64,000 bases of DNA from Macrostomum lignano (GCA_002269645.1 NIVC01003714.1:1-64000), one strand, 5' to 3'; shown: positions 1 to 19,200, counted from the first letter of the stretch. Numbers and translations are program-made. The notes: a model not told the origin generated them from the letters alone.

Positions 1-741
1 AACAAATCCTCATTGCATTTGAAGTTGCAGAAGTTTGAAGTTGAATCTCATTGCACCTGTTTCATATACTTTGCATGGCTAGTCCAAGTACGTCCATATA
101 CTATAAAATGGTCTCGTAATGTGATCGTAATACCCTTTAAGTATTTTATCGTGATGAAATAACGTCATTTGAAATTAATGGACAGACTTTAATTCAATAA
201 AAAAATAACTGGACAAACATGGATTATTCTAAGAAATTCCTTTTTCTAATGTAAATTTCTGGAATAGTTTCGTACAGCAGTTGAAGAAATTTATAATTAA
301 GATAAAAATAAAAATAGGTTACCAACTTGGGCCAAATAACTTTTAGAACGAATCCGTTAGAAGAATCACGACATACGAGACTGCAAATGTTAATATTAGT
401 AGTATCATAATGGCAAGATTGTAAGATACAAAAACATAATTGAAGTCAGAAAAATCAATGACGCTATTGAAACAGACGCTGGGATAATTTGGCTAAAAAT
501 CTCATGTAGAAGAGTGTCATTTCAGTGGAGATTTGTCTGGAATATAAGCTTAGTTACTATTTGAAACAGTTCATTTTATACATGTAAAACCATTGATGCA
601 ACACTCGCAACGCTCGTCATAGATAAAGTTCGCAAGCACTCGTACCAAAGTTTGTAAGCACTCGTACCAAAGTTTGCAAGCACTCGTACTAAAGTTCATG
701 TGGACTTAAACCAAAAATTCGCACGTACTCGAAAAAAGTGA

Positions 742-3700
742 TCACGACACAACTTTAAAGCTTGTCCGCACCCTGCAGTCGGCGCAACTCTCGTCGAAAT
801 AGTCGCCAACCAGCAGCCCATAGTTGCCGGGCAGCTGGCGCATGAGGCCGGCGCTGCCGTCCCACAGCTGCATGTCCCTGGCCAGGACGCTGAGGCTCAC
901 TGTCGATGCCGAGGAGCCGCTTTGCAGCCGGAATTTGCGAAAGCTGGCCAACCAGATGGTTGGATTTCTTCCCACGCCAGTCGGCGGGGTCAGGTACGCT
1001 TTGAGCACAATCGGGCACTCGGAGATGCCGCTAGTCGAAGCGTTGGCGGCTACCCGCAGGCTGAGGTGGAGGTCTTGGCCAGCCGAGATGCTCGCGGAGC
1101 CGTCAGGTGGTCAGCGAGAAGCGGCAGTAGGACAGGCCCTGTGGGGCATCGGTTTGAGCCAAGTTGAGCACAGATGATGCAGTCCCGCTAGGACCCACCA
1201 AACGCAAGGGACATATTCGTTGAATTCCTACTGAGTTTCATCCCAATTTGAGTTTCTAATCGATTATTACCGGCGGAACTACGAGTTTCATCGCTTTCTA
1301 CGAGTACTCGTAGGAGACAGCCCGTTCCACTGACTAGGATCAGGCAGTGCAGAGCGCACACTGCGTCTTGTTGGTCCCCACGAGCGAGGATCGCGCAGTA
1401 CCCAGGGATCGCGCGCAGGAACTCTGGAGCTCTGGTTTTAATCAAGCTCTGATTTACTGAGATACAAAAGCGCTCTTAGCATTGGCAGCACTGTTTGGTT
1501 GAAGAACTTGGTAATTGAGTGTGTTATGCTAAGACTGGCATCTTCTCAGACTGTTTTCTTAAGACTTCTCAAGACAAAAATCACCCATATTATCGGTGTT
1601 TCCTGTCGAATTCTACAAGAAGTTATCATTGTAGTTGGTTTGATCTTGGGACTTGACTTTGGATCCGCTTCCGGAGATTAAAGTTGCGGCCCAAAGTTTC
1701 GAACAAAGCTTCGGCTTTCTGCTCGCAACAGATCCCAAACAACAGGGATCCCAGTCGGAGCTCACCTGGCCAAAGCGGAACAGAGAGCGGAGGCGAGCCG
1801 GACCAGGGCTCGGAGAAGCGGTAGGTCTGGTTGCGCGCAGCCAGATCGTAGTCGGTGATGCTGGGCAGCTGGGCGCGCTCCGACGGCCAGGTGAACGGCA
1901 GGGCGGCCGATGGCGAGTAGCGCCCGGTCAGCAAGTTGATGAGCGCCTGCCAGTTCAAGAGTGAATCAGTTGGTATTTGAAGCAACCTCCCCTACTGCAA
2001 GTAGGAGTGAGAGCGTTAGGTAATCAGAAATGGTAGAAGACAATCAAACGACCCGCAGCGACAAAAACGTATTCATTTTAGATATCAGGTTAAAGGCTTA
2101 ACGTTTTTTTTCAAAAACTTCTTCTTGAAATCATTTTCAACTTTTGGCTCTTAGAGGCTAAAATGGAAAATAGACACGGCACTAATAACATTATTAAATA
2201 CCACCATATGCACTGCACACCGTCAACCCCACACAATCAAAACCCCCACATTCCAAACCTGCACCCACGCACCGGTCCGAAGGTCTGCGCGGGATAGCCG
2301 CACCAGACCACCGCTCGTACGCTGTCATTGCCAATCGCCTCGTCCAGGCCGACGGGAGCTCCGGACACCACGGCCAGCACAACCGGCCTGCCGCTGGCGG
2401 TCAGCAACCGCAGCAGGGCAAGCTGCCCGTCCGGCAGGGTGAGCTGCCGCCGGTCCAGCGCCTCGGTCTCGATGTCAACGCTGGTGCCAACAACGGCTAA
2501 CAGAACGTCGCTCTGCGCGATCAGCGAAGACACCGCGGCCGGATCCTGTCGAGTGCAATAGACTCCGCCGTCTGTGCAGTAGGTCGCGTGACTGAAGGGC
2601 GAGATCAGGGCGGCTGCGCTGGGTGGCTGCGATCAGAAATGCCTCTCCATTGAACTCTCTCTGCTCTCTTTTATCCGATCTCTAATCTCTTTCATCCACT
2701 CTCTTCTCTACGCCGCTCCCTCCATTCGCTCCGTTCTCTTCACTCTGTTTCACTTTGTCCAACTTTTCCGCTCTTCACACTCTTGTCTTACGCTTTCTTC
2801 TCTCCTCTCTTCCCTGCTCTCGGCTTCAAACTCTACCATCTGCTATATTAGACATCTGCCAACTCATTTTACTACCCTTCCGTCTCCACTCCCAAGCGAT
2901 CACACCTGACTTTATCAGCACCGAATCACTCCTTGAGCGCCGGCAGCAGCGGCTGCTCAAACTGCGGCATCCGATTCGGCGAGTAGTCGCCGTAGACCAG
3001 CGACATGTCGTCGGACAGCGGGCCGACCACGCCCAGGCGGAGGCCGGGCCGCTTTATCAGGCCGTCGGGCAGAAAGCCGCCGAGGTTCTTCAGCAGCACC
3101 AGCGAGGTCTGGGCGGCCGTCAAGCTGAGCGCCCGGTGAGCGGCGGACTGGATGAACTGGTCGGGCCGAAGGCTGGAGTAGGGGTTCAGGGCCGGCGGGT
3201 CGAACTCACCCAGCCGCAGGCGGGCAAGGAACAGCGGCCAGGCGGCGGCCCGCAGCTCCGCCTCGGATATCCGGCTGGTGTTCAGTGCTACTGAGAGCTG
3301 CTCAAAGACCACGCAGGACTCGTAGGGGCAGGCGGACAGGTCAAGGTTGACGCCTGCTCTCAGGGACCCGATGGCAGAGCTCTGCGGGCGGGAAAAATTG
3401 GTTGGGAGGGTTGGGAGAAAAACGAAGAGGAGAGAGACCCGATAAAACGGCACCTAGGCCAAGAAGCGTCGCGTCAAAATAGTTTTAGAGTCGTTGCAGG
3501 TAACACAGGTAAAATACGAAGAAAGCGACTCTAGACGAGTCCTAAAAGACAATATGTTACGGTACAAGTTGCCAAAAAGTCAATTCGATGTGTTTTATTG
3601 TCTGCAACTCTAGGGAGAGACGCAAGTGACTCTGGGGCCGCAGAGTCGTATCTGAGGCGTGCTGGAGTTGCTGTAGAGAATCGCTAGAGTCACAGGTGAG

Positions 3701-5781
3701 TTGTTTGCAATGACGTTTTCTTTGGGAGACAGAGAAGGAAGAGAGGGGAGATGAGGAACCAGGGGGAGAAGAGAATGGATGACAAGGGAGATAGTGAAGT
3801 TATCCGGACGATGAATATTAGGAACTCAAGGTCTTCCAATGAGCGAGGCAGCAGTAAAAGTCACCCCAGCGCACCAGGCGGTCCGCAAAGTATTTGTGGA
3901 AGAGGATGGCGAACTCCAGCGCTCCGGCGTCGCTCACAACGTAGCCGGTGAAGTTCCAGCGCTCCCGAAGGACTCCGCGCAGCAGCTGAGCGTTGGCGCA
4001 GGCGGGCACCCCGTTGATGGCGTTGTAGCTGCACATCACGCTGACACTGCCGGCCTCAACGCAGCGCCGGAACTGCGGCAGGAAAGTCTGCTCCAGATCC
4101 TGTTGGCTGACCAGCGCGTTGAAGCCAAAGCGCGACTCCGGATAGCTGTCGGGGCCGTCGTAGGCGGCGAAGTGCTTGCAGCCGGCGCCTGTGAGCAGGT
4201 AGCGGTCAGTGGCGTTGCCCTGCGGGCAGGTGAGCAGAGGACTCGAACTATAAGGTCACTTGTGAGATGAGCTTTTCAAAAAAGTAGTCACAAAGGTTAA
4301 AAGCTTGCACAAGTCCTTTAACTGTCAGGGTTATTGAGACACAGAATTCACGGTCATTGGATCAGAGATTTCAGGGTAATTGGGTCACCGAATTCAGGGT
4401 CATTGGGTCACAGAATTCAGGGTCATTGGATGAGGGAATCCCGGGTCAATGGATCACAATGTTGCCAGAGCCAACCTGCAGTCCTCCAACGTAGGCGGCC
4501 CCCAGCACACCGCTCAGGTGAGGATCTTCCCCGTAGGTCTCCTGGTTGCGGCCCCACAGTGGGTGCCGCAGGATATTAATCACCGGAGCGAAGCACGTGA
4601 GCCCCGTGTGATCACCGTAGTCGCCCTTGGCGACGAAGTCGTTGTGCTTGGCGCGAACCTCCAGGCCGGTGGCGCGGCCAACCTGGCCGAGAATGTCCGG
4701 ATCGAAGGTGGCGGCCAAGCCGACCGCCTGGGGGAAGGAGGTGGCCTGGCCGGACTTGACGGCGCCGCGCAGGCACTCAGTGTTCCACTGGTACGGCCCG
4801 ATGCCAAGGCGGGCGATGGCGGGCGCCGGGCCACCGAACGGGCCGCCGCCGCCCTTGGCCAGCTGCTGCACAAGCTCCTGCGGGCGGTGGGGGCTTGCCG
4901 GTTTGTTTTCAAGGTTTTTTTGCGAACATTGTGGGGGCGTTCATGCAACTTTTGGGTCATTGATGCCAAAATGTGATTGATGGGCATTAGCACAAGTTAC
5001 CGGCCGATATTTTGGTTGGGTTGCATCCATATATTTTAGAGGTTTTTTATGCGGACATCTACCTGACGCTTTATGTGAACGATTTCAACGTCTTTATCCA
5101 GCCATTTTCGGGGATGTTTATGCGGATTTTTGTGAACGATTTAAGGGTGTTTATGTGACTCTTTTTTATATCCTATGAAACTATTTTCAAGAGTAATTGT
5201 GCAGAATATTTCTAGGGTGATTACAGATTGGCCGGATGTTTTTATATAATAATATTAATGACTACACCTGCCCCAATGCGCAGATGTGCAACCGACAGCT
5301 CAGCCGCAGCTATTGTGCTGCGCATCTGAAGGCTGCGTACGGCTGTTCAGTCCCAAGGACTGGAGGGTCGCCACACACACCCTCAATTACCCCAGTTAAT
5401 GCTGGCACTCATTTTACAGCAGGTTTGACTGAAGCAATGCAGAGTTAAGTGTCTTGCTCAAGGACACAAATCGTTCAGAGTGGGTCGAGAATCGAACCCC
5501 CGACCTTTCAGTCGCTTCAACTCCCTCCGAATGCTTGAACTAAAAACTGTGGATGTTGAATTCAAGAACGCAATGTTTTTACGATGCAAAAACAGGCGAA
5601 AACTGGGGCAGGCTCTCCTGGCTCGGCATTGCCCGCCTTCCCCCCTCACCTGAGCAGTCAGGCGGCCCACCAGATCGTCGGCCCGGTCCGGCCACGGGAG
5701 GCTGACATTGCGAAACGGGAAGTCTTCATCAGCCTGGCAGGCCGCCGCCAAGCTCAGTAGCAGGAGCAGCAATCGAAGCAT
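742..5781 (-). CDS. Secreted glycoside hydrolase family 3 (beta-xylosidase/alpha-L-arabinofuranosidase-like), 7 exons, about 750 aa if two apparent 1-nt frameshifts are repaired
   Basis: Exons 5781-5650, 4877-4476, 4219-3875, 3381-2930, 2618-2273, 1946-1766, 1138-742, all GT-AG. Signal peptide MLRLLLLLLSLAAACQA. GH3 motifs: YQWNTECLRG, TSFPQAVGLAATFD, HPLWGRNQETYGEDP, GCKHFAAY, VMCSYNAINGVPACAN, GYVVSD (nucleophile Asp codon 3931-3929), SLVLLKN, WCGYPAQ, TYRF, FRFGQGLSY, and an Fn3-like C-terminus. Exons 6 and 7 are each 1 nt out of frame. Confidence 0.9.
5245..5545 (-). mobile_element. tRNA-derived SINE with a CORE-like central domain, in GH3 intron 1
   Basis: The minus strand shows a B-box GGTTCGATTCTC, then TTGTGTCCTTGAGCAAGACACTTAACTCTGCATTGCTTCAG...CTGTAAAATGAG (resembles the CORE-SINE consensus), and ends in an ATT-rich tail. 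Confidence 0.65.
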
Positions 5782-6376
5782 CTCTCTCTGTCTGCTTGAC
5801 GTTGGCTCAGCGTTTATTTTACCTGGAAAACAAAATTGAAACTAAATTAGCGCAGGTGGTCTCATAGGCAGATCGTTTATCTTTTTTACACGTAGCGCGA
5901 TCGCTCGTACAGATGATACTGCAGTGCAAAGGGCGGCAAGGCGATCGACTGCACACTGTGGGGTAGAGCTGTGCTGCGCATTGCCCAGGGGCAGTGTTGA
6001 CTCGAAAGCCTGAGAGAGATACGATATTCGCTATAGCTGGGGCATGGACAGCTAACGCTGCGCTGGCAAATCGTGACAATTTTTGCTGGAGGCTGCAGGT
6101 TTTCGCTGCAAAATGCATTGGCGAGTAGGGAATTTTTGTTTTTACAAGTATAGCACTAAATTCTAAATACTGCAAAGAACTGACGAGTGAGTAGTAAAAA
6201 ATAATTATTTGGACAGCAAACTTCCTCTTCGGTTTTGGAGATTATCACCATTTTTATAGTCTATGACCGAGACGGTGACAAGGTTAATCGTGGCGTGCTC
6301 AGCCCAACCCATGGCAGTGACTTGAGGCTGCCTGAGCTGCCGCAATAATTTGCCTTCGCAAGCCGCGTTGGCCAGC
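5782..6376. promoter_or_regulatory. Candidate bidirectional promoter between divergent GH3 and J-domain gene 1
   Basis: 595 bp separate the two divergent start codons (5781 minus, 6377 plus). Positional inference only. Confidence 0.35.
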
Positions 6377-7446
6377 ATGAAGCTGGACTACTACGACATC
6401 TTGGGGCTGTCGAGAGCCGCAAAGGCCAACGAAATCACCGAGGCTTACAAACAGCTCGCTGAGCAGTGAGTAATTTGCTAGCGTTAAATAATCAGACTTA
6501 AACGCCAAATCGAAATATTGAGGCCTGAAGCAAGTCCAGAGGCTTGGGCAGGTATTAGACATGTATTCTTACTCGTACCTCTTGAGACTAGGACAGGTGT
6601 TAGAAACATACCCACTCATACCTCAATCAGCATGATTCAGCAAAGCTTCTGTGCCCGCAAACCGGTCTCCAGGTGGCACCCGGCCAACAATCCGGGCTAC
6701 GAAGCCCGGGCAGAGAAGCGCTTTCGCAGGATTAGCGAGGCCTATCAAATCCTCTCGGACCACAAGCGCAGGTATCACTACAAAAAGGCGCTGAAGAAGG
6801 CGGCCAAGCCCTTTGTGAAAAAGCCCGGTTCCTCCATGCAGTTACTCAACGAGGAATGCGCCGGCCCAGTACAAGTTGAGAAGGCCAGAAGCGAAAGTAG
6901 CAGCAGCCTGAGCAGCGTACTGTCTGAGAGCGGGTCGAAAGCGGCAGAGGAGCCGGTGGTCCTGGGTCACAAGTACGCGCACGCGCAGCCCAAGGGACTG
7001 CCGGACGAGACGGCCCTGGGCAAAAACCTCATGATTCAGCAGGTGGGGGAAACACCGTCACGTGCTTCCCCGAGACGCTGCTGTCGCTACGCAACCCGTA
7101 CCGCGTCTACAACGAGGTGGTTGGCGGCGCGAAGCCCAACAAGAGTCCGTGGACCTACTGCGAGCAGCTGGTGGAGTGGCACATTGCCTCCATGGCCAAG
7201 CTCACCGACGTCCTTGACGTATTCGGCAACAAGACGGTGATCACCACGATTGACTACACCGATGGCATGAAGAACATCAAGGTGAAGCGGAACGGCAAGC
7301 TGGTGCAGAACTTCAGCGTCAGCGTGAAGCCGGAGGACTGGCAGGAGGAGGAGCGGGAGACGAAGCGCGGGGCCGGGCACATCATCATCATTGATGAGGC
7401 GCCTGACCCGCCGCCAGGCATGCGGCGGCTGCCCAGAGACCCGTGA
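6377..7446 (+). CDS. J-domain gene 1, DNAJB6-like, HPD changed to HPA; apparent 1-nt deletion in a G-run at 7045-7049
   Basis: Exon 1 6377-6465 (MKLDYYDILGLSRAAKANEITEAYKQLAE). Exon 2 starts at 6673 (WHPANNPG...RFRRISEAYQILSDHKRRYHY). The C-terminal frame (FPETLLSLRNPYRVYNEV...DVFGNKTVITT...VKRNGKLV) ends at 7446. About 287 aa if repaired. Confidence 0.8.
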
Positions 7447-8168
7447 CGACCGAATCTCACGGCCTATACACTTCTAATCATAATTTTCTGTTATTATTTA
7501 AATGGAAGATATTACGATATTTGGATTTTGCTTTCTTGAGGCATCATTTTAAGACCGGGCATTTTATACCTTTTGGTTTTTCTGAGCTTTACTCTTTCCG
7601 AGACTGCCAGGTGTACACGGAATATCGCCGTAAAAGGGACTCAATAATATCAAGGGCACAGCTCCAAAGACAGCTCGAAATCTACGAGAATAGAAGTTGA
7701 AAGTGCATCAAATGAGATAGGAGAGTTATGATCTTTCAGTTTTATTCAATAAATTGACCACTCCACACCTGGACTTTTCGGATAAACATTTGAACCCATT
7801 ACGCTCATATAATCTGCATCAGCTAATTAAACAAATACTATAACTACATTTTATGAGTATATTGGAAGTTCAGGTGAGAAAATCATTTTCTGCGATTCTG
7901 TATTCAAGGTACTTAAAGGCCAATGGTTAGCAGAATCGGCTTTCCATTCCAGGTTTTTAATTCTAGAAGCCCGTGGATCAAGACGATTATTTTCTGTCTT
8001 GGCGAGGAAGTGAAGATGTTTGACAAATAAGACCACAGACTATTCGAGTTCGGTCACGGGTGAAGTAGCTAAGGCCATCTTTAAGTAGAGCTGATGAAGT
8101 ACTTAACAGCTCAAGACGGGTGGCCCTTGCAGCGAACTTGAGATTTGTTTCGGAAAAAGCAGGTCACA

Positions 8169-10703
8169 ATGAAGTTGGACTACTATCAAGTTCTGGAGCT
8201 GCAGCAAACTTCCGACCCGAAGATAATCAAAGATGCTTACCTGCGATTGGCCACTAAGTGAGTCGCAAGGACAAATAATTGAAATTGGAGCGTTCTTGAT
8301 CGAGATTGATAACTGACCAGAATGTCTGATGAAGATTGAGTTGAGCTGATCAGAATGTCTGATGAAGAGTGCGTTGAGCTGATCAGAATGTCCGGTGAAG
8401 AGTGCGTTGAGCTGACCAGAATGCCGGTGAAGAATGCGTTAAGCTGACCAGAATGTCTGATGAAGATTGAGTTGAGCTGATCAGAATGTCTGATGAAGAG
8501 TGAGTTGAGCTGACTAGAATGTCCGGTGATGAGTGCGTTGAGCTGACCAGAATGTCTGATGAAGAGTGAGTTGAGCTGACCAGAATGTCTGATGAAGAGT
8601 GAGTTGAGCTGACCAGAATGTCCGGTGAAGAGTGCGTTGAGCTGACCAGAATGTCCGGTGAAGAATGCGTTAAGCTGACCAGAATGTCTGATGAAGAGTG
8701 AGTTGAGCTGACCAGAATGTCTGATGAAGAGTGAGTTGAGCTGATCAGAATGTCTGATGAAGAGTGAGTTGAGCTGACCAGAATGTCTGATGAAGATTGA
8801 GTTGAGCTGACCAGAATGTCTGATGAAGAGTGCGTTGAGCTGACCAGAATGTCTGATGAAGAGTGCGTTGAGCTGACCAGAATGTCTGATGAAGAGTGCG
8901 TTGAGCTGACCAGAATGTCTGATGAAGAGTGCGTTGAGCTGACCAGAATGTCTGATGAAGAGTGCGTTGAGCTGACCAGAATGTCTGATGAAGAGTGAGT
9001 TGAGCTGACCAGAATGTCCGGTGAAGAGTGAGTTGAGCTGACCAGAATGTCCGGTGAAGAGTGCGTTGAGCTGACCAGAATGTCTGATGAAGAGTGAGTT
9101 GAGCTGACCAGAATGTCCGGTGAAGAGTGAGTTGAGCTGACCAGAATGTCTGATGAAGAGTGAGTTGAGCTGACCAGAATGTCCGGTGAAGAGTGCGTTG
9201 AGCTGACCAGAATGTCCGGTGAAGAGTGCGTTGAGCTGACCAGAATGCCTTATTACTCGTAGTTTGCAGTGGCTTTGGTACTGCAAAAATTGTGACAACA
9301 GTCTATCCACAGCCGGCGAGGATCCAAGCAGTCATGCCTGTTCCACTGATGCACTCTCGCAAACGAATACGAGGCTTATGCATGCAGGCACACGTTCACA
9401 CAGGTTGTATAGCGACTCCGGTTCTCATTGTCAGGCATGTATGCCTCAGGGGCTAGGGCTAACCGCAGAGCTATTCTGCTCTCCTCCAAAAACTGCAATG
9501 CTAGGAGTCAAATTTCACGAGTGTTTTGTAGCGACCAGATAGTCCAATTAGGGGTCTGTGACTGTGACTCACTGACTAACCAAACTAACAAATTGTGATT
9601 AATAACAAACAAACAGTCAGTTATGGAAATTTAAATATTTCATTCATGCGAAATCGCGAATACAAGTTGCAGATTCGGTGTTATTATGCTACTGTCAATA
9701 GTGTTTAACTAATGTACGCGTATTCAAGCGTCGCTTTTATTCCTCAATGCGTAAATTCTTCTATTCTATCTCGATCTCAAGCAGCACCTGTAAACCAGAA
9801 ATCAATTTGCGTTTCAACCCTGATTATCAGCTTCCCATTGCCTCACTCCGACCAAATCACTCCCTTGCCAATCTGGCACCAAGGTGGCACCCGGAGAACA
9901 ACCCGGACAACAAGGCGGAGGCTGAGCGGCACTTCTTCCGCATCAGCGAGGCCTTCCAGATTCTGTACTGCAACGAAAAACGCAAACGCTACCTGCAGTG
10001 CCTTTTGAAGTCTAACGCACAGGACCTCGAAAAGAACGACGTTAAATCCAAGGAGTCGCGAGTCAAGCAGGAATCCACCATGGAACTGGACCAGTTAACC
10101 GAGGAATTCGAGACGGCACTCAGGAAGAACTTCCTCAGCGAGAAGTCGGAGAGCGGAGAGGCGCTCTCTTTCCCGTCCAACCTAATCTCTCTGCGGGATC
10201 CGTACAAAGTGCACGTCGAGGCCGTCTGCAACTCGCCGTCTGACCTCAGCGACCGGGCCTTCTGCGAGCAGCTGGTGCAGCGGCACATCGCCAAGGGCAC
10301 CCGTCACACCAAGAATGTGGACCCGTTCGGCAACAAGATTGAAATTACCACCGTGCAGTCAACTGGCGGTGAGATGACCCTTAATGTAACCCGCAACGGC
10401 AAGGAGGTGGACATGAGAATCAAGGGGCTGACCACCAAGTTGACCAACGTCTCCAAGGCAATGACAGTCTCGGTTGGTCCCATATCGCAGCGCGGTGGTG
10501 GTCCCAGCTCACAGCATGGTGGTCCCAGCTCGCATCATGGTGGTCCCAGCTCGCACCACGGTGGTCCCAGCTCGCACCACGGTGGTCCCAGCTCGCACCA
10601 TGGTGGTCCCAGCTCGCACCACGGTGGTCCCAGCTCGCACCGCGGTGGTTCGCACAAAACAACATCCGTGTTGACAACAAAAAGTACCAAGACTAACAAG
10701 TGA
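8169..10703 (+). CDS. J-domain gene 2, DNAJB6-like, HPD changed to HPE, with a GGPSSHH repeat tail (302 aa)
   Basis: Exon 1 8169-8257 (MKLDYYQVLELQQTSDPKIIKDAYLRLAT; 89 nt, same as gene 1). Exon 2 9884-10703 (WHPENNPDNKAEAERHFFRISEAFQIL). Phase-2 intron at the same site as in the paralogs. Confidence 0.88.
8315..9248. repeat. 33-bp minisatellite (GATGAAGAGTGCGTTGAGCTGACCAGAATGTCT), about 28 copies, in the J-gene 2 intron
   Basis: Directly visible tandem units; source of ORFs 8237..9310 and 8816..8998. Confidence 0.95.
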
Positions 10704-11155
10704 ATGGTGGAGGACAGCCAAAAGTTATAAAGGATTTGGAACTGGAAGATAAGAGAGCAAAGTCTGCTTACGACGAGTGCTTTTGATCGGTGCACTCTCA
10801 TTTTCTAACTCTCACTCGACCTGCAAACCAAATTTCCGGACACCGAACCTCTGTTATTAAAAGCGTTTTAAAAAGAATAATTCATTTCAATTCACTGAGC
10901 TTCAGTAGCATTGAAGATTTTTTTTGTTTATAAGGTCAACCCAAGACATTTTAGTTCAAAAAAATATACAGATCTTGATTTTGCACTAAACCAACAATCC
11001 TTTTCAACACTCGCTACGACACCTTACGACATGTGCTAATTAAAGTATTTTAGCTCGCGCAAGCGTAGTCTATGGCACAACCGTATTTGCGTGCATATTC
11101 TGGAAAGCACACAAGTGATGCTAATTAGAATAGTAAGATTAGCAAAGACGAAACC

Positions 11156-11977
11156 ATGTCCAACCCCGAGGACTTTTACGCCATTCTGGAGGTGCCTCCA
11201 TCGGCCACGGCCCAGGAGATTAAGGAGGCGTACAAGCGACTGGCACTAAGGTGAGATTTTACTGTTCCGTACCTCATACCAAAGAGAAGTAAAGATGACA
11301 TTGTGAATGCTAGATGTCAGTAAAGTGCGTCAGAATGACAAAAGGCGAAGTACCTGTAAGAATGTCAGCAGGGTGTACGAAAGGCTCGTAATTAAGACTC
11401 GAGAAATGTATCAATTAAGTGCCAGCAAAGCACCAGAAAAAGATGAGTTCAGCAAGATGCGCTGAAAAGGCGGAAAACGGTCATTGCCAACCCCAACTCA
11501 CCCGCGCACTGCACTTCGCACCACTGCTCCAGGTGGCACCCGGACAAGAACCCGAACAACCGACCGGAGGCCGAGCTGCGATTCCGCAAGCTGTCCGAGG
11601 CCTACCAAGTGCTGTCGGACCCGAGCCGCCGGGCGGACTATGACCGCACTCGCCGCAGCTCCCACGGTCCGCGGCCGGGTGGCGGCAGCTTCAGGTGGAG
11701 CAGCACGACAGCCGAGCAGCTGCACCGGAACCTCTGGAGCGCCTTCCGCGACCCGTTCTTCGTCTATAACGAAGTGTTCAGCAGTGCCGGCGTCGGCAAC
11801 GATGGAATTGTCGGGCAGTTCAGCGCGGTCAGCGAGACGACCACGGAAGACGGGCAGGGCAACCGGACGGTCGTCAGAACGACAGTCGAGAACGGGGTAA
11901 AGGTGACGACGGTGTTCAAAAACGGCGAGCAGACGGAGCAGACCACCACGGCTCTGAACCAGCTGGCTCGGCGCTGA
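11156..11977 (+). CDS. J-domain gene 3, canonical HPD, DNAJB6/DNAJB2-like class B co-chaperone (179 aa)
   Basis: Exon 1 11156-11250 ([31 protein letters not shown]). Exon 2 11533-11977 ([37 protein letters not shown]...[13 protein letters not shown]...[22 protein letters not shown]). AATAAA at 12060-12065. Confidence 0.92.
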
Positions 11978-12206
11978 GCTGAAATCAAATCATCAAGTAT
12001 CAACTGACTACTGGAAGTAGCCTGAGCAGCGTTTCTGTTAACTTTTACCAATTTCATTTAATAAAAATAGCCTTCGTTTTGCATTCAAAACTGCCGATTT
12101 GAATGAGAAAACCAAAATGCACTCTATGGCAAGAATTCGATCCCGAGTCCGTATATAGATTTGAGACAAAATCTGGAAGCTGATCCGCACTCTGACAGCA
12201 AGATTC

Positions 12207-13975
12207 ATGGCCGAGGATTTCTACTACGAGGTGCTGGGCGTGTCGGGCTTGTCCAGCAAGCAGAGCATCGAATCTGCCTACAGACAGCTGCGTGAGCGGT
12301 GAGTTCTCGCCTGCTTTGAAAAGCTTTGACATATTAGAACTAATATTCAATTTAGATTAGCTGTCCGTGCTACACTACTAAATCTATAATTAGCTAGATA
12401 AGCATTCCACTCCGTAATTCCAGCTGGCATATTGGCTAGATTCGCAATCCACTCCGTACTTCTAGCTGGTATACTGGCTAGATTCGCAATCCACTCCGCA
12501 ATTTCAGCTAGCATGTTGGCTGGATTAGCAATCCACTCCGCAATTTCAGCTAGCATGTTGGCTGGATTAGCAATCTACTCCGCAATTTCAGCTAGCATGT
12601 TGGCTGGATTAGCAATCTACTCCGCAATTTCAGCTAGCATGTTGGCTGGATTAGCAATCTACTCCGTAATTCCAGCAGGCATATTGGCAAGATTAGCAAT
12701 CCACTCTGTAATTTCAGATGGCACCCTAGCAACAACCCTGGCAACGAGTACGAGGCGTCAAGGCGCACACAGCAGATCTACCAGGCCTACATGACCCTGG
12801 CCGAGCCCTACCGAAGACAAACCTACGACGGACTGCGAAGCAACCAATACTTCAGGCAGAGACTGCGGGACCACTGCAGCGGCTGGGCCGGCCATCTGGG
12901 CTACGACTCGACCCGGCGTGACCTGAACTACAACGACTCGACTGCGCGCCTTATCCAGGAGTTCGCGCCAACCGTGCTGCTGCTATTCTATCCAGTGGAG
13001 CCCAGCGTGTCGATGCCCGCCTACCGCGGCTCGATGCCGTTCGGTCAGACGCAGGCGCCGATGATGCACCAGCAGCGCCCAATGAGCTTCGGTGCGCCGA
13101 AAAGCTTTTCGGGCGTTCCCAAGCTTATGGGCTCGGCCATGGTCGGCGGCCTGGCTGGCGGCCTCGCCGGCGGCCTGGCCAGGAGCGGCCCCAATATTGG
13201 CATTCCGAAGTGGGGTGGCCTGTCCAGGGCTGGCCTGTCCAGGGGTGGCCTGTCCAGGGGTGGCCCGTCCAAGGATGGCCTGTCCAGAGGGCTGTTCGTG
13301 GGCGGCTTGCTCGGGGGACTGTTCAGAGGAGGCCTGTCTGGGGGCGGCCGGTCGTGGGGCGCTAAGCCTCGGCGCGCCAAGCCGTGGATTGCCAACAGAA
13401 TGATGCAGCCCAGATGCTCCCCAGACGAGGAGGACGACGATGATCAAGATGAGAGCGATCACGACATGGATCACGATCAATTCGATCACGATATGAGCCA
13501 TGACTTATTTGATCACGGTATGAGCCATGACCAGTTCGATCACGGTATGAGCAATGACCAGTTTGATCACGGCATGAGCCATGACCAGTTCGATCACGGT
13601 ATGAGCCATGACCAGTTCGATCACGGTATGAGTCATGACCAGTTTGATCACGGCATGAGCCATGACCAGTTCGATCACGGTATGAGCCATGACCAGTTCG
13701 ATCACGGTATGAGCCATGACCAGTTTGATAACGGTATGAGCCATGACCAGTTTGATCACGGTATGAGCCATGACCAGATCGATCACGGTATGAGCCATGA
13801 CCAGTTTGATCACGGTATGAGCCATGACCAGTTCGATCACGGTATGAGCCATGACCAGTTCGATCACGGTATGAGCCATGACCAGTTCGATCACGGTATG
13901 AGCCATGACCAGTTCGATCACGGTATGGACTATAATGGCGACTTTGATGGTGGCTTCGACGGAGGAGCAGACTGA
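12207..13975 (+). CDS. J-domain gene 4, HPD changed to HPS, Gly/Arg-rich middle and DHGMSHDQF repeat tail (449 aa)
   Basis: Exon 1 12207-12298 (MAEDFYYEVLGVSGLSSKQSIESAYRQLRE). Exon 2 12718-13975 (WHPSNNPGNEYEASRRTQQIYQAYMTLAEPYRRQTYD), continuing in frame as ORF 12791..13975. Confidence 0.87.
12410..12717. repeat. 42-bp minisatellite, about 7 copies, in the J-gene 4 intron; the last unit supplies the 3' splice site
   Basis: Unit CCACTCCGCAATTTCAGCTAGCATGTTGGCTGGATTAGCAAT; the acceptor ATTTCAG at 12711-12717 matches the in-unit AATTTCAG. Confidence 0.9.
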
Positions 13976-14194
13976 CAAAAATCAACGCAGTGACCAGCAG
14001 CTGACCAAACTGTGACTTTCATTTTATTATTCATTTGAGTGCCGAAAAATATAAAATCTATTCTGAGAAGTCATGTTTCAGGAACGACTGTACATTGTGG
14101 TGGGGCAGGGAAGGTCGGGAGCGAGTGTACGTTAGGGTGAGGCAGAGAACGCCGGGAGCGAGTGAAAATTGGGGTGAGAGAGGGAAAATCGGAA

Positions 14195-15600
14195 GTGTAC
14201 AATGGGGTTGGGCAGGGAGGGCCGGGAGCGAGTGTACATTAGGGTTGGGCAGGGAGGGCCGGGAGCGAGTGTACATAGGGGTTGGGCAGGGAGGGCCGGG
14301 AGCGAGTGTACATTAGGGTTGGGCAGGGAGGGCCGGGAGCGAGTGTACATTAGGGTTGGGCAGGGAGGGCCGGGAGCGAGTGTACATTGGGGTTGGGCAG
14401 GGAGGGCCGGGAGCGAGTGTACATTAGGGTTGGGCAGGGAGGGCCGGGAGCGAGTGTACATTGGGGTTGGGCAGGGAGGGCCGGGAGCGAGTGTACATTA
14501 GGGTTGGGCAGGGAGGGCCGGGAGCGAGTGTACATTGGGGTTGGGCAGGGAGGGCCGGGAGCAAGTGTACATTGGGGTTGGGCAGGGAGGGCCGGGAGCG
14601 AGTGTACATAGGGGTTGGGCAGGGAGGGCCGGGAGCGAGTGTACATTAGGGTTGGGCAGGGAGGGCCGGGAGCGAGTGTACATTAGGGTTGGGCAGGGAG
14701 GGCCGGGAGCGAGTGTACATTAGGGTTGGGCAGGGAGGGCCGGGAGCGAGTGTACATTGGGGTTGGGCAGGGAGGGCCGGGAGCGAGTGTACATTAGGGT
14801 TGGGCAGGGAGGGCCGGGAGCGAGTGTACATTGGGGTTGGGCAGGGAGGGCCGGGAGCGAGTGTACATTAGGGTTGGGCAGGGAGGGCCGGGAGCGAGTG
14901 TACATTGGGGTTGGGCAGGGAGGGCCGGGAGCAAGTGTACATTGGGGTTGGGCAGGGAGGGCCGGGAGCGAGTGTACATAGGGGTTGGGCAGGGAGGGCC
15001 GGGAGCGAGTGTACCTTGGGGTTGGGCAGGGAGGGCCGGGAGCGAGTGTACATTGGGGTTGGGCAGGGAGGGCCGGGAGCGAGTGTACATTGGGGTTGGG
15101 CAGGGAGGGCCGGGAGCGAGTGTACCTTGGGGTTGGGCAGGGAGGGCCGGGAGCGAGTGTACCTTGGGGTTGGGCAGGGAGGGCCGGGAGCGAGTGTACC
15201 TTGGGGTTGGGCAGGGAGGGCCGGGAGCGAGTGTACATAGGGGTTGGGCAGGGAGGGCCGGGAGCGAGTGTACCTTGGGGTTGGGCAGGGAGGGCCGGGA
15301 GCGAGTGTACCTTGGGGTTGGGCAGGGAGGGCCGGGAGCGAGTGTACCTTGGGGTTGGGCAGGGAGGGCCGGGAGCGAGTGTACATAGGGGTTGGGCAGG
15401 GAGGGCCGGGAGCGAGTGTACCTTGGGGTTGGGCAGGGAGGGCCGGGAGCGAGTGTACATTGGGGTTGGGCAGGGAGGGCCGGGAGCGAGTGTACATAGG
15501 GGTTGGGCAGGGAGGGCCGGGAGCGAGTGTACCTTGGGGTTGGGCAGGGAGGGCCGGGAGCAAGTGTACCTTGGGATGAGGCAGGGAAGGCCTGGAACGA
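14195..15600. repeat. 37-bp G-rich minisatellite, about 37 copies, five GGG tracts per unit
   Basis: Unit GGGTTGGGCAGGGAGGGCCGGGAGCGAGTGTACATTA and variants; lies between the convergent J-gene 4 and ARMC8. Confidence 0.95.
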
Positions 15601-16252
15601 GTGCATGCTAGCAAATGGTTACGATTAGAGCTATTCGAGTTTAATTTATTTAGCTTGCAATATGTAGTTAATGTTTACAGCTAAGATTACTGTTTAGACA
15701 TTTATGAGATAAACCGATAAGTACTTATATGAGAAAGTGGTTAAACAGTTATAAGCTCGGCAGGGCAGCTGTCCTCCAACTGTCCCAATTACTGTATTAC
15801 GGGGTCTTATGCTAGGACACCTTTTTCCTGCAGTTCTGAGATCAAATAAGCAAAGAAATGATTTAAGTTAAATTTTTCAAAAAACGATCTGATGTATTTT
15901 TGAGTATGCCAGCGCAATGACCATCATCAGTGAGAGCGGTGTGTGCTAACAGGTTCAGCAATTGTTAGAATTTCAATGAACTGATGTTCAGTTTAAAAGC
16001 ACTGCAATCGAAAACAATAAACTGGTCGTTATAAAAAGGGGAGCAGACGGGGTCGCGAGGTCAGAGGGGTAAAATAGGCGGGAAGCGCTCTGTCAGACAA
16101 GTTCCGCTGTGGCCAATAGACTGCGCCACGAGGCAGTAAAAGCAGCAACTAGAATGGGATAAAATTGGGAATAAAATGTCGCAAAGTAACACTTAGACTA
16201 AAGATTGAACAAATGGCGATTGAATAGTGTTAGGCAGTTTAGAATAAATAAA

Positions 16253-19200
16253 TTAAAACAGGTTCAGCATTCGCTCCGCTCGGTGCGTCTCTTCAGCAGT
16301 CAGGATGGGATGGCGGTGGCTGCGGTCCAGCAGCTTCGCCACCTGGTCGGGGAAGCCCAGCTTCGCCAGCACGGAGCGGCACTGCGGGTCCGGCGCTGAA
16401 AAGGGTGGGTAAGGAGAGTGTATGGGGTGGTGGGGAGTGTACATTGATGTGGTGGGGAGTGTACATTGGGGTGGTGGGAGTGCACATTGGGGTGGTGGGA
16501 GTGCACATTGGGGTGGTGGGGAGTGTACATTGGGGTGATGGGGAGTGTACATTGGGGTGGTGGGGAGTGTACATTGATGTGGTGGGGAGTGTACATTGGG
16601 GTGGTGGGGAGTGTACATTGGGGTGGTCGGGAGCGTACATTGGGGTGGTGGGAGTGCACATTGGGGTGGTGGGAGTGCACATTGGGGTGGTGGGTAGTGT
16701 ACATTGGTGGTCGGGAGCGTACATTGGGAGGGACCGTTCCAATCAACACAAACTCACAAGCGGAGTCAGCTTCCGTCTCAGAAGCTGCTTCAGCATTCGG
16801 TCGCGGCTCCATCAGATTTGTGAAAATTCTCAGGCTCAGCTGCGGCAGAGGCAGTTCCGGTTGACTCTGAAATGAATTTAACATTGGCCTTAGTGATATA
16901 CTTGCTTCTGTATCAATTCAATAAAAAATGCTTAAATAAATCTGATTTAATACTTTGTAAGGCTTTAAAATTTAGGTTCTAAATGTAAGGTGCACAACGA
17001 AGGCTCCAGGACTGGCACAAGGCTCCAAGGACTGGTACAGGGAAGGCTCCAAGGACTGGTACAGGGAAGGCTCCAAGGACTGGTACAGGGAAGGCTCCAA
17101 GGACTGGTACAGGGAAGGCTCCAAGGACTGGTACAGGGAAGGCTCCAGGACTGGCACAGGGAAGGCTCCAGGAATGGCAGTCGCTCACCAGGCAGTCGCG
17201 CACACGCAGCAGGAGGGCTTCCCGAGGCAGCAGCGCCAGTCGGGCGGCCGCCCCTCCGTCAGCGGCGTTGACCAGAGCGGCCAGGGCGGCGGGCCGCAGA
17301 ACGGACTCGGCGGGCAGGCAGGGGTCCAGCGAGGACTCCAGCAGCGGCAGCAGCTGCGGCCGCGCCAACAGCAGGCGGTCGGCTCGGTCAGCTCCGCCAG
17401 CCAGCAGGTTGCGCAGCGCCTCCAGCGCTTTGCAGCAGGCGGCGGCGTCTGCGGTGGCGTCACCAGTTGCGATGGTCGCCGAAGGCTCCAGTTGGGTGCG
17501 CGGCAGCTGCAGCTCGTCCAGCATGGCGGCCAGGAGCTGCGGCAGTCGGTCGGCCAGCAGCTGCCAAGCGGCGCTGTCGCCGCAGTCGTAGGCGGCGTTG
17601 GCCAGCGCCCAGGCCAGGCTCAGGCGGAGACTTCGCTGCCGGGTCGGCGCGGGCAGGCAGCAGTCGGCCAGGAGGTTGAGCAGCAGCGACAGGCAGGACT
17701 CGGTGAGCAGGCGGTGGCGGCAGGGCGAGTGCGGCAGCAGCAGATTGCCGGTCAGGGCCACGGCCGTCTCAGCCGATGCCGCAGCTCCGTCCTCGGCGAC
17801 GGACCCGGCGTACCGTTGAAGGCATTCAAGGGCGAAGTCGGCCAGGCCGGGGTCGGCAAACAGCTGCAGGAGGCTGTCGGCACAGCGGGACAGCGCGTGC
17901 AGCAGCAGCAGCAGCGCCGAGCGGAGACTGTCAGGCGGTGGCGGCTGCTGACTCGCCGAATTCGGTAAAGTCGCCGCCGACGCGGTGGCAGTTGAGGAGA
18001 GCGCGGAGACCAGCTGCAGCAGCTGGGAGCGGAGCGGCACGCCGGGCTGCCTGGGCCACACGGGCGACAGCAGGGCGGCCAGGCGGAGCAGGCGGGGCAG
18101 CAGCGGCCGGCAAGCGGCCTCCGCCGGCAGCCGCTCCAGAAGGCCGTCAAGCAGCAGGCAGTCGCAGTGGGCGATGGAGTCCAGCGGGACACAGCCGGTC
18201 TGCAGCAGGAGTTGCATTTTGTATGAGCAGGATGAATATGGCGAGTAGAATGAATAGCAGTATGACTATTAGTAAGAGCAGAAAGTATGACAAGCAGTGC
18301 GAGTAGCAGCACGAGCAGTAGTATGAGAAGTAGTATAAGCCGCTTATAAGAGCATTAGTATGAGAAGTAGTATAAGCCGCTTATAAGAGCATTAGTATGA
18401 GAAGTAGTATAAGCCGCTTATAAGAGCAGTAGTATGAGAAAAAAGTATGAGCATTAGAATGAGCAGTAGTACGGGTAGTAGTATGAGCAGGCAGTAGTAT
18501 GAGCAGTAGTATTATGAGCAGCATGCATGTCACGGTTAGGGGATTAGCTCATGAGAATGGGATTAGCTCATGAAAATGGGATGAGCTCATGAGAATGGGA
18601 TTAGTTAATGAGAATGGGATTAGCTCATGAGAACGGGATTAGCTCATGAGAATGGGATTATCAATAGCAGCATGCATGTCACGGTCAGGGGATTAGCTCG
18701 TGAGAATGGGATTATCAATAGCAGCATGCATGTCACGGTCAGGGGATTAGCTCATGAGAATGGGATTATCAATAGCAGCATGCGTGTTACGGTTAGGGGA
18801 TTAGCTCATGAGAATGGGATTAGCTCATGAGAATGGGATTATCAATAGCAGCATGCATGTCACGGTCAGGGGATTAGCTCATGAGAATGGGATTATCAAT
18901 AGCAGCATGCGTGTCACGGTCAGGGGATTAGCTCATGAGAATGGGATTATCAATAGCAGCATGCATGTCACGGTCAGGGGATTAGCTCATGAGAATGGGA
19001 TTATCAATAGCAGCATGCATGTCACGGTCAGGGGATTAGCTCATGAGAATGGGATTATCAATAGCAGCATGCGTGTCACGGTCAGGGGATTAGCTCATGA
19101 GAATGGGATTATCAATAGCAGCATGCATGTCACGGTCAGGGGATTAGCTCATGAGAATGGGATTATCAATGGCAGCATGTGTGTCACGGTCAGGGGATTA

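What the first reader, a model, noticed from the sequence alone, without database searches (positions are those of the whole stretch)
6377..13975. Tandem cluster of four DNAJB6-type genes: one canonical HPD copy and three HPD-substituted copies (HPA, HPE, HPS)
Seen: four same-strand genes share a phase-2 intron just before W-H-P. The motifs are HPA (6677-6685), HPE (9888-9896), HPD (11537-11545) and HPS (12722-12730), so three different substitutions hit the same Asp while the J-domain helices remain. Genes 1-3 also keep the helix-5-like segment (SLRNPYRVYNEV / SLRDPYKVHVEA / [13 protein letters not shown]; human DNAJB6 FRNPDDVFREFF) and the beta-rich C-terminal domain. Known: HPD is required to stimulate Hsp70 ATPase; DNAJB6/B8 oligomerise via the C-terminal region and suppress aggregation partly without Hsp70. 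Inference: a co-located module of one active co-chaperone plus J-like partners. These could act as Hsp70-uncoupled holdases, dominant-negative tuners or hetero-oligomer subunits with new low-complexity tails.
Basis: partly seen in the sequence, partly recalled or inferred. Interest (0 to 1): 0.8.

Follow-up and report, generated by a model that had tools for sequence, protein, structure and literature searches.

The report
Flatworm DnaJ cluster with HPD-less copies
A flatworm (Macrostomum lignano) locus carries four neighbouring co-chaperone (J-domain) genes, one normal and three that have lost the key aspartate needed to switch on Hsp70; they appear to be real, long-maintained genes and add a new example to a known but poorly understood class of "pseudo" J-proteins.

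Summary
Four same-strand, two-exon genes lie at 6377-13975. Each has a phase-2 intron directly before W-H-P, and the motifs are HPA, HPE, HPD and HPS at the stated coordinates. All four pass Pfam's DnaJ threshold.

The window is Macrostomum lignano. A GenBank contig (NIVC01004548.1) is collinear with it at about 99% identity and carries the same four motifs, so a sequencing error in the motifs is unlikely.

- **Gene 3 (HPD)** aligns over its full length with human DNAJB6b lacking the S/T region.
- **Genes 1 and 2** keep a helix-5-like motif and a beta-rich C-terminal domain. None of genes 1-3 has a DNAJB6-like S/T-rich region, and genes 1-2 also lack a G/F-rich linker.
- **Gene 4** is a J domain followed by low-complexity tails only.

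- Gene 1 has a frame break here, in a run of five G; the GenBank copy has six G and an intact 287-aa protein.
- The HPx copies also lost the Lys after HPD and part of the basic face of helix II.
- HPE is described in the literature as the only tolerated replacement.
- The three HPx copies group together in the J-domain tree, which may mean one ancestral loss.

The paralogues are ancient (synonymous sites saturated, pN below pS), and the ORFs are intact in both copies. Genes 1 and 4 are in an RNA-seq-derived annotation. I read genes 1 and 4 as lineage-specific type IV "pseudo-JDPs" of the DNAJB6-like class. Their function is untested.

The parts
6377..6465 (+). g1 exon 1 (J-domain helices I-II, 89 nt, ends in phase 2)
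   Evidence: Identical to the L001 copy, which GenBank annotates as PAA47171.1.
6466..6672 (+). g1 intron (207 nt, GTGAGT..CAG)
   Evidence: The same junction is used by the RNA-seq-derived GenBank model.
6673..7446 (+). g1 exon 2: WHPANNP, linker, helix-5-like SLRNPYRVYNEV, beta-rich C-terminal domain, acidic/Pro tail. Frame broken in this window.
6677..6685 (+). g1 HPA (CAC CCG GCC)
   Evidence: The same codons occur in L001.
7045..7049 (+). Run of five G where g1 loses its frame. The GenBank copy has six G and reads VGGNTVTCFPE.
8169..8257 (+). g2 exon 1 (89 nt)
8258..9883 (+). g2 intron (1626 nt), holding a 33-bp minisatellite of 28 copies at 8313-9247
9884..10703 (+). g2 exon 2: WHPENNP, linker, SLRDPYKVHVEA helix, beta domain, and a (GGPSSHH)x7 tail from a 21-nt repeat at 10497-10649
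9888..9896 (+). g2 HPE (CAC CCG GAG)
11156..11250 (+). g3 exon 1 (95 nt)
11251..11532 (+). g3 intron (282 nt)
11533..11977 (+). g3 exon 2: WHPDKNP, short Gly-rich linker, [13 protein letters not shown] helix 5, DNAJB6-type beta C-terminal domain
   Evidence: One search gives a full-length alignment to 6u3r (E = 1.1e-24).
11537..11545 (+). g3 canonical HPD (CAC CCG GAC)
12207..12298 (+). g4 exon 1 (92 nt)
12299..12717 (+). g4 intron (419 nt), holding a 42-bp minisatellite at 12393-12717
12718..13975 (+). g4 exon 2: WHPSNNP, the rest of the J domain, a Gly/Leu/Ser/Arg-rich region, then an Asp/His-rich tail with (SHDQFDHGM)x16 from a 27-nt repeat at 13481-13927
   Evidence: There is no similarity to the DNAJB6 C-terminal domain.
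12722..12730 (+). g4 HPS (CAC CCT AGC)
   Evidence: The L001 copy keeps HPS but lacks the next 12 nt, encoding NNPG.

Best explanation
This is a Macrostomum lignano locus holding four old tandem duplicates of a short gene of the DNAJB6-like class (non-canonical class B, without the S/T region).

**Canonical copy.** g3 has stayed a canonical J-domain co-chaperone. It has HPD, a basic helix II, helix 5 and the beta C-terminal domain.

**Divergent copies.** g1, g2 and g4 form a faster-evolving group. The Hsp70-activating surface has been given up or relaxed in this group:
- The Asp of HPD is Ala, Glu or Ser.
- The following Lys is Asn in all three.
- The basic residues of helix II are partly lost (g1 and g4) or reduced (g2).
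- The hydrophobic core of the J fold is still kept.

**Proposed function (inferred, not shown).** g1 and g4 most likely act as type IV "pseudo-JDPs". These would be folded J-like modules that no longer trigger Hsp70 ATP hydrolysis. They would work through their other parts: the C-terminal beta domain in g1, and the Gly-rich and Asp/His-rich repeat tails in g4. g2 (HPE, with more of helix II retained) may still couple to an Hsp70.

**Shown here:** gene structures, motifs, homology, ancient age, maintained ORFs, a second genomic copy with the same motifs, and transcript-derived annotation for g1 and g4.

**Inferred:** loss of ATPase stimulation, from the general rule for HPD mutants, and any cellular role.
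For: - **Organism and second copy.** The exhaustive protein search returned PAA47171.1 (BOX15_Mlig000041g5, M. lignano), which equals g1 with one extra G. Contig NIVC01004548.1 (L001) is collinear with window 1-17.7 kb. All four genes and all four motifs are present there.
- **Family.** All four pass Pfam DnaJ. The best PDB J-domain matches are DNAJB6, B8 and B7. g3 aligns with 6u3r over residues 6-178, E = 1.1e-24. The g1/g2 C-terminal region against the g3/DNAJB6/tick C-terminal profile gives hhalign probability 86%, E = 4.8e-6. The AF2 model of g2 has a J domain, a helix at 136-146 and three to four strands, and its best Foldseek PDB hit is 6u3r, E = 5.7e-7 over 232 columns.
- **Shared origin.** Intron position and phase are identical in all four genes.
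- **Long maintenance.** Between paralogues pS is 0.55-0.73 (dS at or above 1) and pN is 0.33-0.50, with pN below pS in every pair. J-core residues are invariant. The chance of such open frames in random sequence is 1e-3 to 7e-10.
- **Comparison of the two copies.** Non-repeat CDS differs at 4/3134 sites, against 28/3351 in the cluster's introns and spacers (p = 2.5e-5). The three CDS indels other than the G run are 12, 21 and 27 nt, all in frame. In non-coding DNA 28 of 31 indels are not multiples of 3.
- **Transcription.** The GenBank annotation of this assembly was built only from RNA-seq and de novo transcripts (PMC5730564). It contains g1, whose protein sequence is my model with the sixth G, and g4, with the span and 436-aa length of my model; the g4 sequence could not be retrieved.
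- **HPD rule and known class.** Replacements in HPD abolish ATPase stimulation. HPE is the only tolerated variant reported. Type IV or pseudo-JDPs include DnaJB13, Pam16 and 13 P. falciparum proteins (PMC13254874).
- **Erosion of the interface.** See the alignment. At the DnaJ R22/K26/R27/R36 equivalents, g3 has K/K/R/K, g1 has T/K/Q/N, g2 has K/L/R/N and g4 has E/R/Q/N. The assignment of these positions as Hsp70 contacts comes from my own knowledge of the DnaK-J-domain structure 5NRO.
Against: - No biochemical or expression data were available for these genes, and tissue and timing of expression are unknown.
- g2 and g3 are not in the GenBank annotation, so their transcription is unconfirmed.
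- g1 is frame-broken in this window.
- All four substitutions between the two copies are nonsynonymous and none is synonymous. The low coding divergence therefore cannot be read as simple protein-level purifying selection; gene conversion or assembly noise in non-coding DNA may contribute.
- dN/dS between paralogues rests on saturated synonymous sites.
- The g4 copy in L001 has lost four residues next to HPS, which looks like a decaying J domain rather than a conserved one.
- No orthologues were found outside M. lignano, so conservation of the HPx states across species is untested.
- A de novo designed J-domain analogue without HPD can stimulate Hsc70 (PMC13254874), so the HPD rule is not absolute.
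Confidence: 0.55

Rival explanations
1. The HPx copies are decaying or neutral duplicates (pseudogenes, or transcribed relics) with no function of their own.
For: - g1 has a frame break in this window.
- The L001 copy of g4 lacks NNPG beside the motif.
- All four substitutions between the copies are nonsynonymous.
- The Asp position shows three different residues, which fits an unconstrained site.
- M. lignano has a redundant, partly duplicated genome and 123 HSP40 genes (PMC5730564; PMC9559072).
- g2 is not annotated.
Against: - Paralogues are separated by one or more substitutions per synonymous site, yet all keep open frames of 148-419 codons in two genomic copies.
- pN is below pS in every pair.
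- J-fold core residues are invariant.
- Three of the four CDS indels between the copies are in frame; the fourth is the single G in g1.
- The g1 break lies in a homopolymer. 13 of the 25 one- to two-nt indels between the two assemblies lie in runs of 4 or more, and the GenBank copy of g1 is intact.
- g1 and g4 are in a transcript-derived annotation.
Confidence: 0.12
2. The HPx copies, at least g2 (HPE), are still working Hsp70 co-chaperones, perhaps matched to a divergent Hsp70 paralogue. The cluster would then be an ordinary expansion of functional J-proteins.
For: - HPE is the one replacement known to be tolerated, in E. coli DjlB and DjlC acting with HscC (PMC13254874).
- g2 keeps 2 of the 4 basic contact positions of helix II and the motif flank, and 3 of the 5 basic helix II positions of DNAJB6.
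- Flatworm Hsp70 and Hsp40 families are expanded (PMC9559072).
- The J fold is conserved in all copies.
Against: - HPA and HPS are non-conservative, and even D-to-N abolishes stimulation in studied systems.
- g1 and g4 have also lost most helix II basic residues and the Lys/Arg after the motif.
Confidence: 0.18
3. The HPx copies co-assemble with the canonical g3 through the shared C-terminal domain, or dock J to J as Pam16 does with Pam18. In this way they tune or block its recruitment of Hsp70.
For: - g1, g2 and g3 share a homologous helix 5 and beta domain.
- DNAJB6 oligomerises through its C-terminal region (established knowledge).
- Pam16-Pam18 is a precedent for a J-like and J pair.
- The genes are adjacent and on the same strand, with short spacers of 229-722 nt. 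This would allow co-expression.
Against: - There is no evidence of co-expression or interaction.
- g4 has no C-terminal domain.
- The C-terminal domains of g1/g2 and g3 are only about 27% identical, and g1/g2 carry an extra helix.
- The paralogues are ancient and highly diverged.
Confidence: 0.12
4. The HPx motifs are sequencing or assembly errors.
For: The two assemblies differ by many 1-nt indels, so the error rate is not negligible.
Against: - The motif codons are identical in an independent GenBank contig.
- The changes are substitutions, with two needed for Ser, and are accompanied by many other changes in the J domain.
Confidence: 0.02

Closest known systems
Human DNAJB6b / DNAJB8 (non-canonical class B, B') and the DNAJB6b deltaST structure 6U3R
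   Same: - N-terminal J domain of the DNAJB6/B8/B7 type in all four genes.
- g3 aligns end to end with 6u3r.
- g1-g3 have the FRxPxxV(F/Y)xE helix-5 motif and a short beta-strand C-terminal domain.
   Different: - There is no S/T-rich region, which is the part required for suppression of polyQ and amyloid aggregation.
- g1 and g2 have a charged, partly helical linker instead of a G/F region, and an extra helix (FCEQLVxxHIA).
- g4 has no C-terminal domain.
- Three copies lack the Asp of HPD.
Type IV J-proteins / pseudo-JDPs (for example human DNAJB13 with HPL, and the 13 P. falciparum type IV JDPs)
   Same: A clearly recognisable J domain with the HPD Asp replaced (HPA, HPS, and conservatively HPE). 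Domain make-up would otherwise place them in class B.
   Different: - DNAJB13 is a canonical class B protein (beta-sandwich domains) of the axonemal radial spoke. The Plasmodium proteins are exported.
- Here the background is DNAJB6-like, and the HPD-less copies sit next to a canonical paralogue in one tandem array.
Pam16 (J-like) with Pam18 (J) of the mitochondrial import motor
   Same: It is a precedent for a J-like protein working together with, and restraining, an active J-protein.
   Different: - Pam16 is a class C type mitochondrial protein with DKE/DKS in place of HPD and is unrelated outside the J fold.
- No interaction is shown for the flatworm proteins.
E. coli DjlB / DjlC (HPE) with HscC
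   Same: The HPE variant, as in g2, is reported as the only tolerated replacement.
   Different: These are bacterial, membrane-anchored class C proteins with a specialised Hsp70. No matching divergent Hsp70 has been identified here.

Membership tests
J-domain protein (Pfam PF00226) | Sequence matches the J-domain model above the curated threshold | tested here: met
   Scores are 72.3, 63.1, 92.6 and 55.4 bits against a cut-off of 27.8 for g1-g4. The AF2 J domain of g2 has pLDDT 77-90.
J-domain protein (functional co-chaperone) | His-Pro-Asp motif in the loop between helices II and III | tested here: not met
   Met only by g3 (HPD). g1 has HPA, g2 has HPE and g4 has HPS. The same holds in L001.
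J-domain protein (functional co-chaperone) | Stimulates Hsp70 ATPase | not testable with these tools
   This needs recombinant protein assays.
Non-canonical class B (DNAJB6/DNAJB8-like) | N-terminal J domain closest to DNAJB6/B7/B8 | tested here: met
   The top PDB hits for all four are 6u3r, 2dmx and 2ej7.
Non-canonical class B (DNAJB6/DNAJB8-like) | G/F-rich linker containing the autoinhibitory helix 5 | tested here: inconclusive
   The helix-5 motif is present in g1-g3 and is predicted helical in g2. However, g1 and g2 have no G/F-rich linker, g3 has only a short Gly-rich stretch, and g4 shows no significant match.
Non-canonical class B (DNAJB6/DNAJB8-like) | Ser/Thr-rich region (client binding, anti-amyloid activity) | tested here: not met
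   g3 aligns with the deltaST construct without an insert. g1 has only a short Ser-rich patch, and g2 and g4 have none in the homologous position.
Non-canonical class B (DNAJB6/DNAJB8-like) | C-terminal beta-sheet domain | tested here: met
   This is met for g1-g3 only.
- g3: phmmer alignment through the C-terminal domain of 6u3r.
- g1/g2: hhalign probability 86%, E = 4.8e-6; strands in the AF2 model at moderate confidence; Foldseek top hit 6u3r.
- g4: not met.
Type IV / pseudo-JDP | Recognisable J domain with non-conservative replacement in HPD | tested here: met
   g1 (Asp to Ala) and g4 (Asp to Ser) meet it. g2 (Asp to Glu) is conservative, so its membership is doubtful.
Pam16/Pam18-type J-like:J pair | Stable complex between the J-like and the active J protein | not testable with these tools
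   No interaction data are available, and no multimer prediction tool was on hand.

The most novel reading that the evidence does not exclude
The cluster is a self-contained regulatory module. HPD-dead DNAJB6-like paralogues would co-assemble with the canonical paralogue g3 through the shared C-terminal beta domain and set how much Hsp70 is recruited to particular clients. The His/Asp-rich and Gly-rich tails would add new client or metal binding. This would be a cytosolic, class B' counterpart of Pam16-Pam18, in an animal where transgenesis and RNAi are available.
Probability: 0.1. Interest if true: 0.7.

Novelty: new member of a known kind. Interest (0 to 1): 0.42.

Why it matters
J-proteins with a damaged HPD motif are known, for example DNAJB13, Pam16 and the Plasmodium type IV proteins. 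A 2026 review states that it is still unclear whether such deviations are accidents of evolution or selected (PMC13254874).

This locus offers a natural series, HPD, HPE, HPA and HPS, on one shared DNAJB6-like background and at one genomic address. The host is a flatworm with a published transgenesis method and a transcript-based genome annotation (PMC5730564). That makes the question testable by swapping the residue, measuring Hsp70 ATPase stimulation, and looking for phenotypes and partners.

It also shows that the large HSP40 count reported for M. lignano (123 genes, PMC9559072) includes diverged copies lacking the HPD Asp (HPA, HPS), not only polyploid duplicates. The finding does not reveal a new kind of system.

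Tried and rejected
- **Mini-intron in g1.** I considered reading g1 with a 32-nt GT..AG mini-intron (7044-7075) to restore the frame. I rejected this because it would delete CFPE, which aligns with SFPS in g2. The spacing to g2 is exactly one base short of 8 codons, and the GenBank protein reads straight through with six G.
- **Word-indexed homology searches.** Searches with g3, with a four-gene profile and with g1 gave only generic J-domain hits, and no orthologue or further paralogue. The profile search was swamped by bacterial DnaJ.
- **Exhaustive search with g2 exon 2.** The only hit outside the J domain, other than g1 itself, was an RHS-repeat protein matching the beta-hairpins. I treated this as repeat-like resemblance, not homology.
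- **Heat-shock elements.** No perfect nGAAnnTTCnnGAAn element occurs anywhere in the window.
- **Expression data.** Supplementary tables of four M. lignano papers were tried for this gene; three held searchable files with no entry for Mlig000041, and the fourth had none held as text.
- **g4 and the DNAJB6 C-terminal domain.** I tested whether g4 keeps a DNAJB6-type C-terminal domain or helix 5. hhalign probability was at or below 0.14%.
- **Non-coding RNA.** Rfam and tRNA scans of the window found nothing.
- **dN/dS between the two genomic copies.** There are too few differences (4, all nonsynonymous) to be informative.
Full report
**What is in the sequence**

The region 6377-13975 holds four genes on the + strand, each with two exons:
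- g1: 6377-6465 + 6673-7446
- g2: 8169-8257 + 9884-10703 (302 aa)
- g3: 11156-11250 + 11533-11977 (179 aa)
- g4: 12207-12298 + 12718-13975 (449 aa)

All introns are GTGAG..AG. First exons are 89, 89, 95 and 92 nt, so each intron is phase 2 and splits the codon just before Trp of W-H-P.

All four proteins pass Pfam's DnaJ model (72, 63, 93 and 55 bits; cut-off 27.8). tblastn finds no fifth J domain in the window.

The J-domain frame ends at TGA 7238-7240. The helix-5-like motif and the C-terminal domain lie in another frame, with a stop at 7444-7446. The switch must fall between ...LMIQQ and FPETLL.

In g2 these two landmarks are 8 codons apart. In g1 they are 23 nt apart, one base short, and the stretch contains a run of five G at 7045-7049. 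A 32-nt GT..AG "intron" would also restore the frame but would remove residues that align with g2, so I rejected it.

**Where the window comes from, and a second copy**

An exhaustive HMMER search with g2 exon 2 against 1.84 billion representative proteins gave one hit beyond the J domain, other than the RHS-repeat protein described under Limits: a 287-aa protein identical to g1 read with six G (VGGNTVTCFPE). It is PAA47171.1, [quoted passage not shown], on contig NIVC01004548.1 of assembly GCA_002269645.1. I fetched that contig as L001.

L001 is collinear with window 1-17,700, so the window is M. lignano. It is a second copy of this locus: a haplotype, one of the duplicated blocks known in this genome, or another assembly (PMC5730564).

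All four genes are present in L001 with the same splice sites and the same HPA, HPE, HPD and HPS. That makes a sequencing error in the motifs very unlikely.

The g1 frame break is one of 25 one- to two-nt indels between the two sequences, 13 of them in homopolymers of 4 or more. It may therefore be an assembly error or a recent null allele, and I cannot tell which.

**What kind of J-proteins these are**

- **J domains.** For all four, the best solved-structure matches are the J domains of DNAJB6, DNAJB8 and DNAJB7.
- **g3.** It aligns over residues 6-178 with the DNAJB6b deltaST construct 6u3r (E = 1.1e-24). It is a short DNAJB6-like protein with helix 5 and the beta C-terminal domain but no S/T-rich region.
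- **g1 and g2.** They are 40% identical to each other over a 92-residue C-terminal block. That block matches a profile of the C-terminal regions of g3, human DNAJB6 and a tick homologue with hhalign probability 86%, E = 4.8e-6. An AlphaFold2 model of g2 has mean pLDDT 61, with the J domain at 77-90 and the C-terminal domain at 65-76. It shows the J domain, a helix over SLRDPYKVHVEA, a further helix and three to four strands. Its best Foldseek hit in the PDB is 6u3r (E = 5.7e-7, 232 columns), ahead of J-domain-only hits. However, g1 and g2 have a charged linker instead of a G/F region, and no copy has the S/T-rich region that DNAJB6 needs to suppress polyQ aggregation (PMC13254874).
- **g4.** Its post-J sequence has no detectable similarity to either C-terminal profile. 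It consists of a Gly/Leu/Ser/Arg-rich stretch and an Asp/His-rich tail with 16 copies of SHDQFDHGM. g2 ends in seven copies of GGPSSHH.

**The Hsp70-facing surface**

All three HPx copies have changed the following Lys to Asn as well as the Asp (HPxNNP against HPDKNP). The table shows the positions equivalent to DnaJ R22, K26, R27 and R36. Their role as Hsp70 contacts is from my own knowledge of structure 5NRO, not from a tool. The residues are read from the alignment.

| Copy | R22 | K26 | R27 | R36 |
|---|---|---|---|---|
| g3 | K | K | R | K |
| g1 | T | K | Q | N |
| g2 | K | L | R | N |
| g4 | E | R | Q | N |

The hydrophobic core residues of the J fold are invariant in all four. So the fold is kept while the interface is eroded, most in g1 and g4 and least in g2.

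The 2026 review notes that even D-to-N abolishes ATPase stimulation. It also notes that HPE is the only replacement known to be tolerated, in DjlB and DjlC with HscC. g2 should therefore not be assumed to be dead.

**One loss or three?**

In a neighbour-joining tree of J domains, g1, g2 and g4 group together (bootstrap 75%) on long branches. g3 sits with canonical DNAJB6-like proteins. Long-branch attraction is possible, but the shared Lys-to-Asn change points the same way.

Codon parsimony does not separate one early loss from three separate changes (GAC to GCC, GAG and AGC need 1, 1 and 2 steps). "Three substitutions hit the same Asp" is therefore no better supported than "the site became free once and then drifted".

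**Are they real, maintained genes?**

1. **The duplications are old.** Between paralogues pS is 0.55-0.73 (dS at or above 1) and pN is 0.33-0.50, with pN below pS in every pair. Even so, open frames of 148-419 codons persist. The chance of that in random sequence is 6e-4 to 7e-10.
2. **Coding sequence is less diverged between the two genomic copies.** Non-repeat coding sequence differs at 4 of 3134 sites, against 28 of 3351 in the cluster's unique introns and spacers (Fisher p = 2.5e-5). Coding indels are 12, 21 and 27 nt, all in frame, plus the single G in g1. In non-coding DNA 28 of 31 indels are not multiples of three.
3. **There is indirect transcript evidence for g1 and g4.** The GenBank annotation of this assembly was derived solely from RNA-seq and de novo transcripts (PMC5730564). 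It contains g1 with exactly my splice model and g4 with my span and length of 436 aa. g2 and g3 are not annotated. The pipeline dropped repeat-overlapping transcripts and may keep one ORF per transcript, so this absence is not evidence against their transcription.

Caveats:
- All four differences between the copies are nonsynonymous and none is synonymous. About six synonymous differences would be expected if only protein-level selection acted, so gene conversion or noisier non-coding assembly probably contributes.
- The L001 copy of g4 has lost NNPG right beside HPS, which suggests little constraint on that loop.

**Interpretation**

The best reading is an old tandem family of DNAJB6-like genes. 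One member (g3) is a conventional co-chaperone. Three members have relaxed or abandoned Hsp70 activation while keeping the J fold. These are lineage-specific type IV "pseudo-JDPs", certain in that sense for g1 and g4 and doubtful for g2. That they no longer stimulate Hsp70 is inferred from the general behaviour of HPD mutants and is not shown.

They have no direct support here, and the absence of an S/T-rich region weakens the DNAJB6-style holdase analogy.

**Comparison with what is known**

HPD-less J-proteins are an established category: DNAJB13 (HPL), Pam16, and 13 P. falciparum type IV proteins. The review names DnaJB13 as the only class B example it lists ("at least one").

What is new here is the DNAJB6-like background, the side-by-side arrangement with a canonical paralogue, and three different residues at the Asp position. 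I found no orthologues outside M. lignano in the collections available and no paper describing these genes. I rate it a new member of a known kind, of moderate interest.

**Limits**

- No reads, no expression atlas and no eukaryotic genome collection were searchable.
- Tissue of expression, transcription of g2 and g3, conservation in other Macrostomum species and all biochemistry remain open.
- No perfect heat-shock element is present in the window.
- The RHS-repeat protein hit to the g2 beta-hairpins was not followed up.

Noticed in passing
window 7045-7049 (g1): Run of five G that breaks the g1 reading frame. The GenBank M. lignano copy has six G and an intact 287-aa protein. It is either an assembly homopolymer error or a recent null allele.
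   Followed up: yes
L001 16866-16890 vs window 12729-12740: The second genomic copy of g4 has a 12-nt in-frame deletion removing NNPG directly after HPS, which shortens the helix II-III loop. It also has one fewer 27-nt repeat. The second copy of g2 has one fewer 21-nt repeat.
   Followed up: yes
window 6377-13975 vs L001: Between the two copies, coding DNA shows 4 differences, all nonsynonymous and none synonymous. Flanking non-coding DNA differs at 0.84%. This is too few synonymous changes for simple purifying selection; gene conversion or assembly noise is possible.
   Followed up: partly
window about 1-5800, minus strand (for example ORF 2926-3453): Upstream neighbour is a glycoside hydrolase family 3 gene, annotated in L001 as a 474-aa product with PF00933. 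Several 1-nt indels between the two copies fall in this region.
   Followed up: partly
window 8313-9247, 12393-12717, 14081-15603, 31238-32562, 43107-44538, 46118-47798 and many more: The window is packed with mini- and microsatellites (57 TRF rows). Examples are a 33-bp x28 array inside the g2 intron, a 42-bp array inside the g4 intron, a 37-bp x41 array just downstream of g4, and (AGAC)x331. This fits the tandem-repeat-rich M. lignano genome.
   Followed up: partly
window 53238-54185 and 56258-56791, minus strand: Exons of a peptidase family M13 (neprilysin-like) gene, matching PF01431 and PF05649.
   Followed up: partly
window 45425-45988 (+) and 62046-62603 (+): ORFs with a WSC domain (PF01822) and a weak NUDIX match (PF00293).
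   Followed up: no
window 24001-28000 and 60001-62000: AT-rich blocks (GC 0.30-0.36) in an otherwise roughly 50% GC window. No long ORFs or recognisable domains were seen in the ORFs of the first block; its longer ORFs were inspected by eye but not scanned against Pfam.
   Followed up: partly
P0009 (JGI metagenome, 6414 aa, 'RHS repeat-associated protein') vs g2 residues about 171-201: Eleven stretches of an RHS/YD-repeat protein match the FGNKIEITT...RNGKEV beta-hairpins of the g2 C-terminal domain (E = 6.7e-18). The DNAJB6-type beta domain looks YD-repeat-like. This is probably convergence in a hairpin motif.
   Followed up: no
P0010 = CAN7993254.1, Ixodes hexagonus, 497 aa: One tick gene model contains two complete DNAJB6-like units (J domain, helix 5 and beta domain), both with HPD. 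It probably merges two tandem genes. Tandem duplication of DNAJB6-like genes therefore also occurs elsewhere.
   Followed up: no
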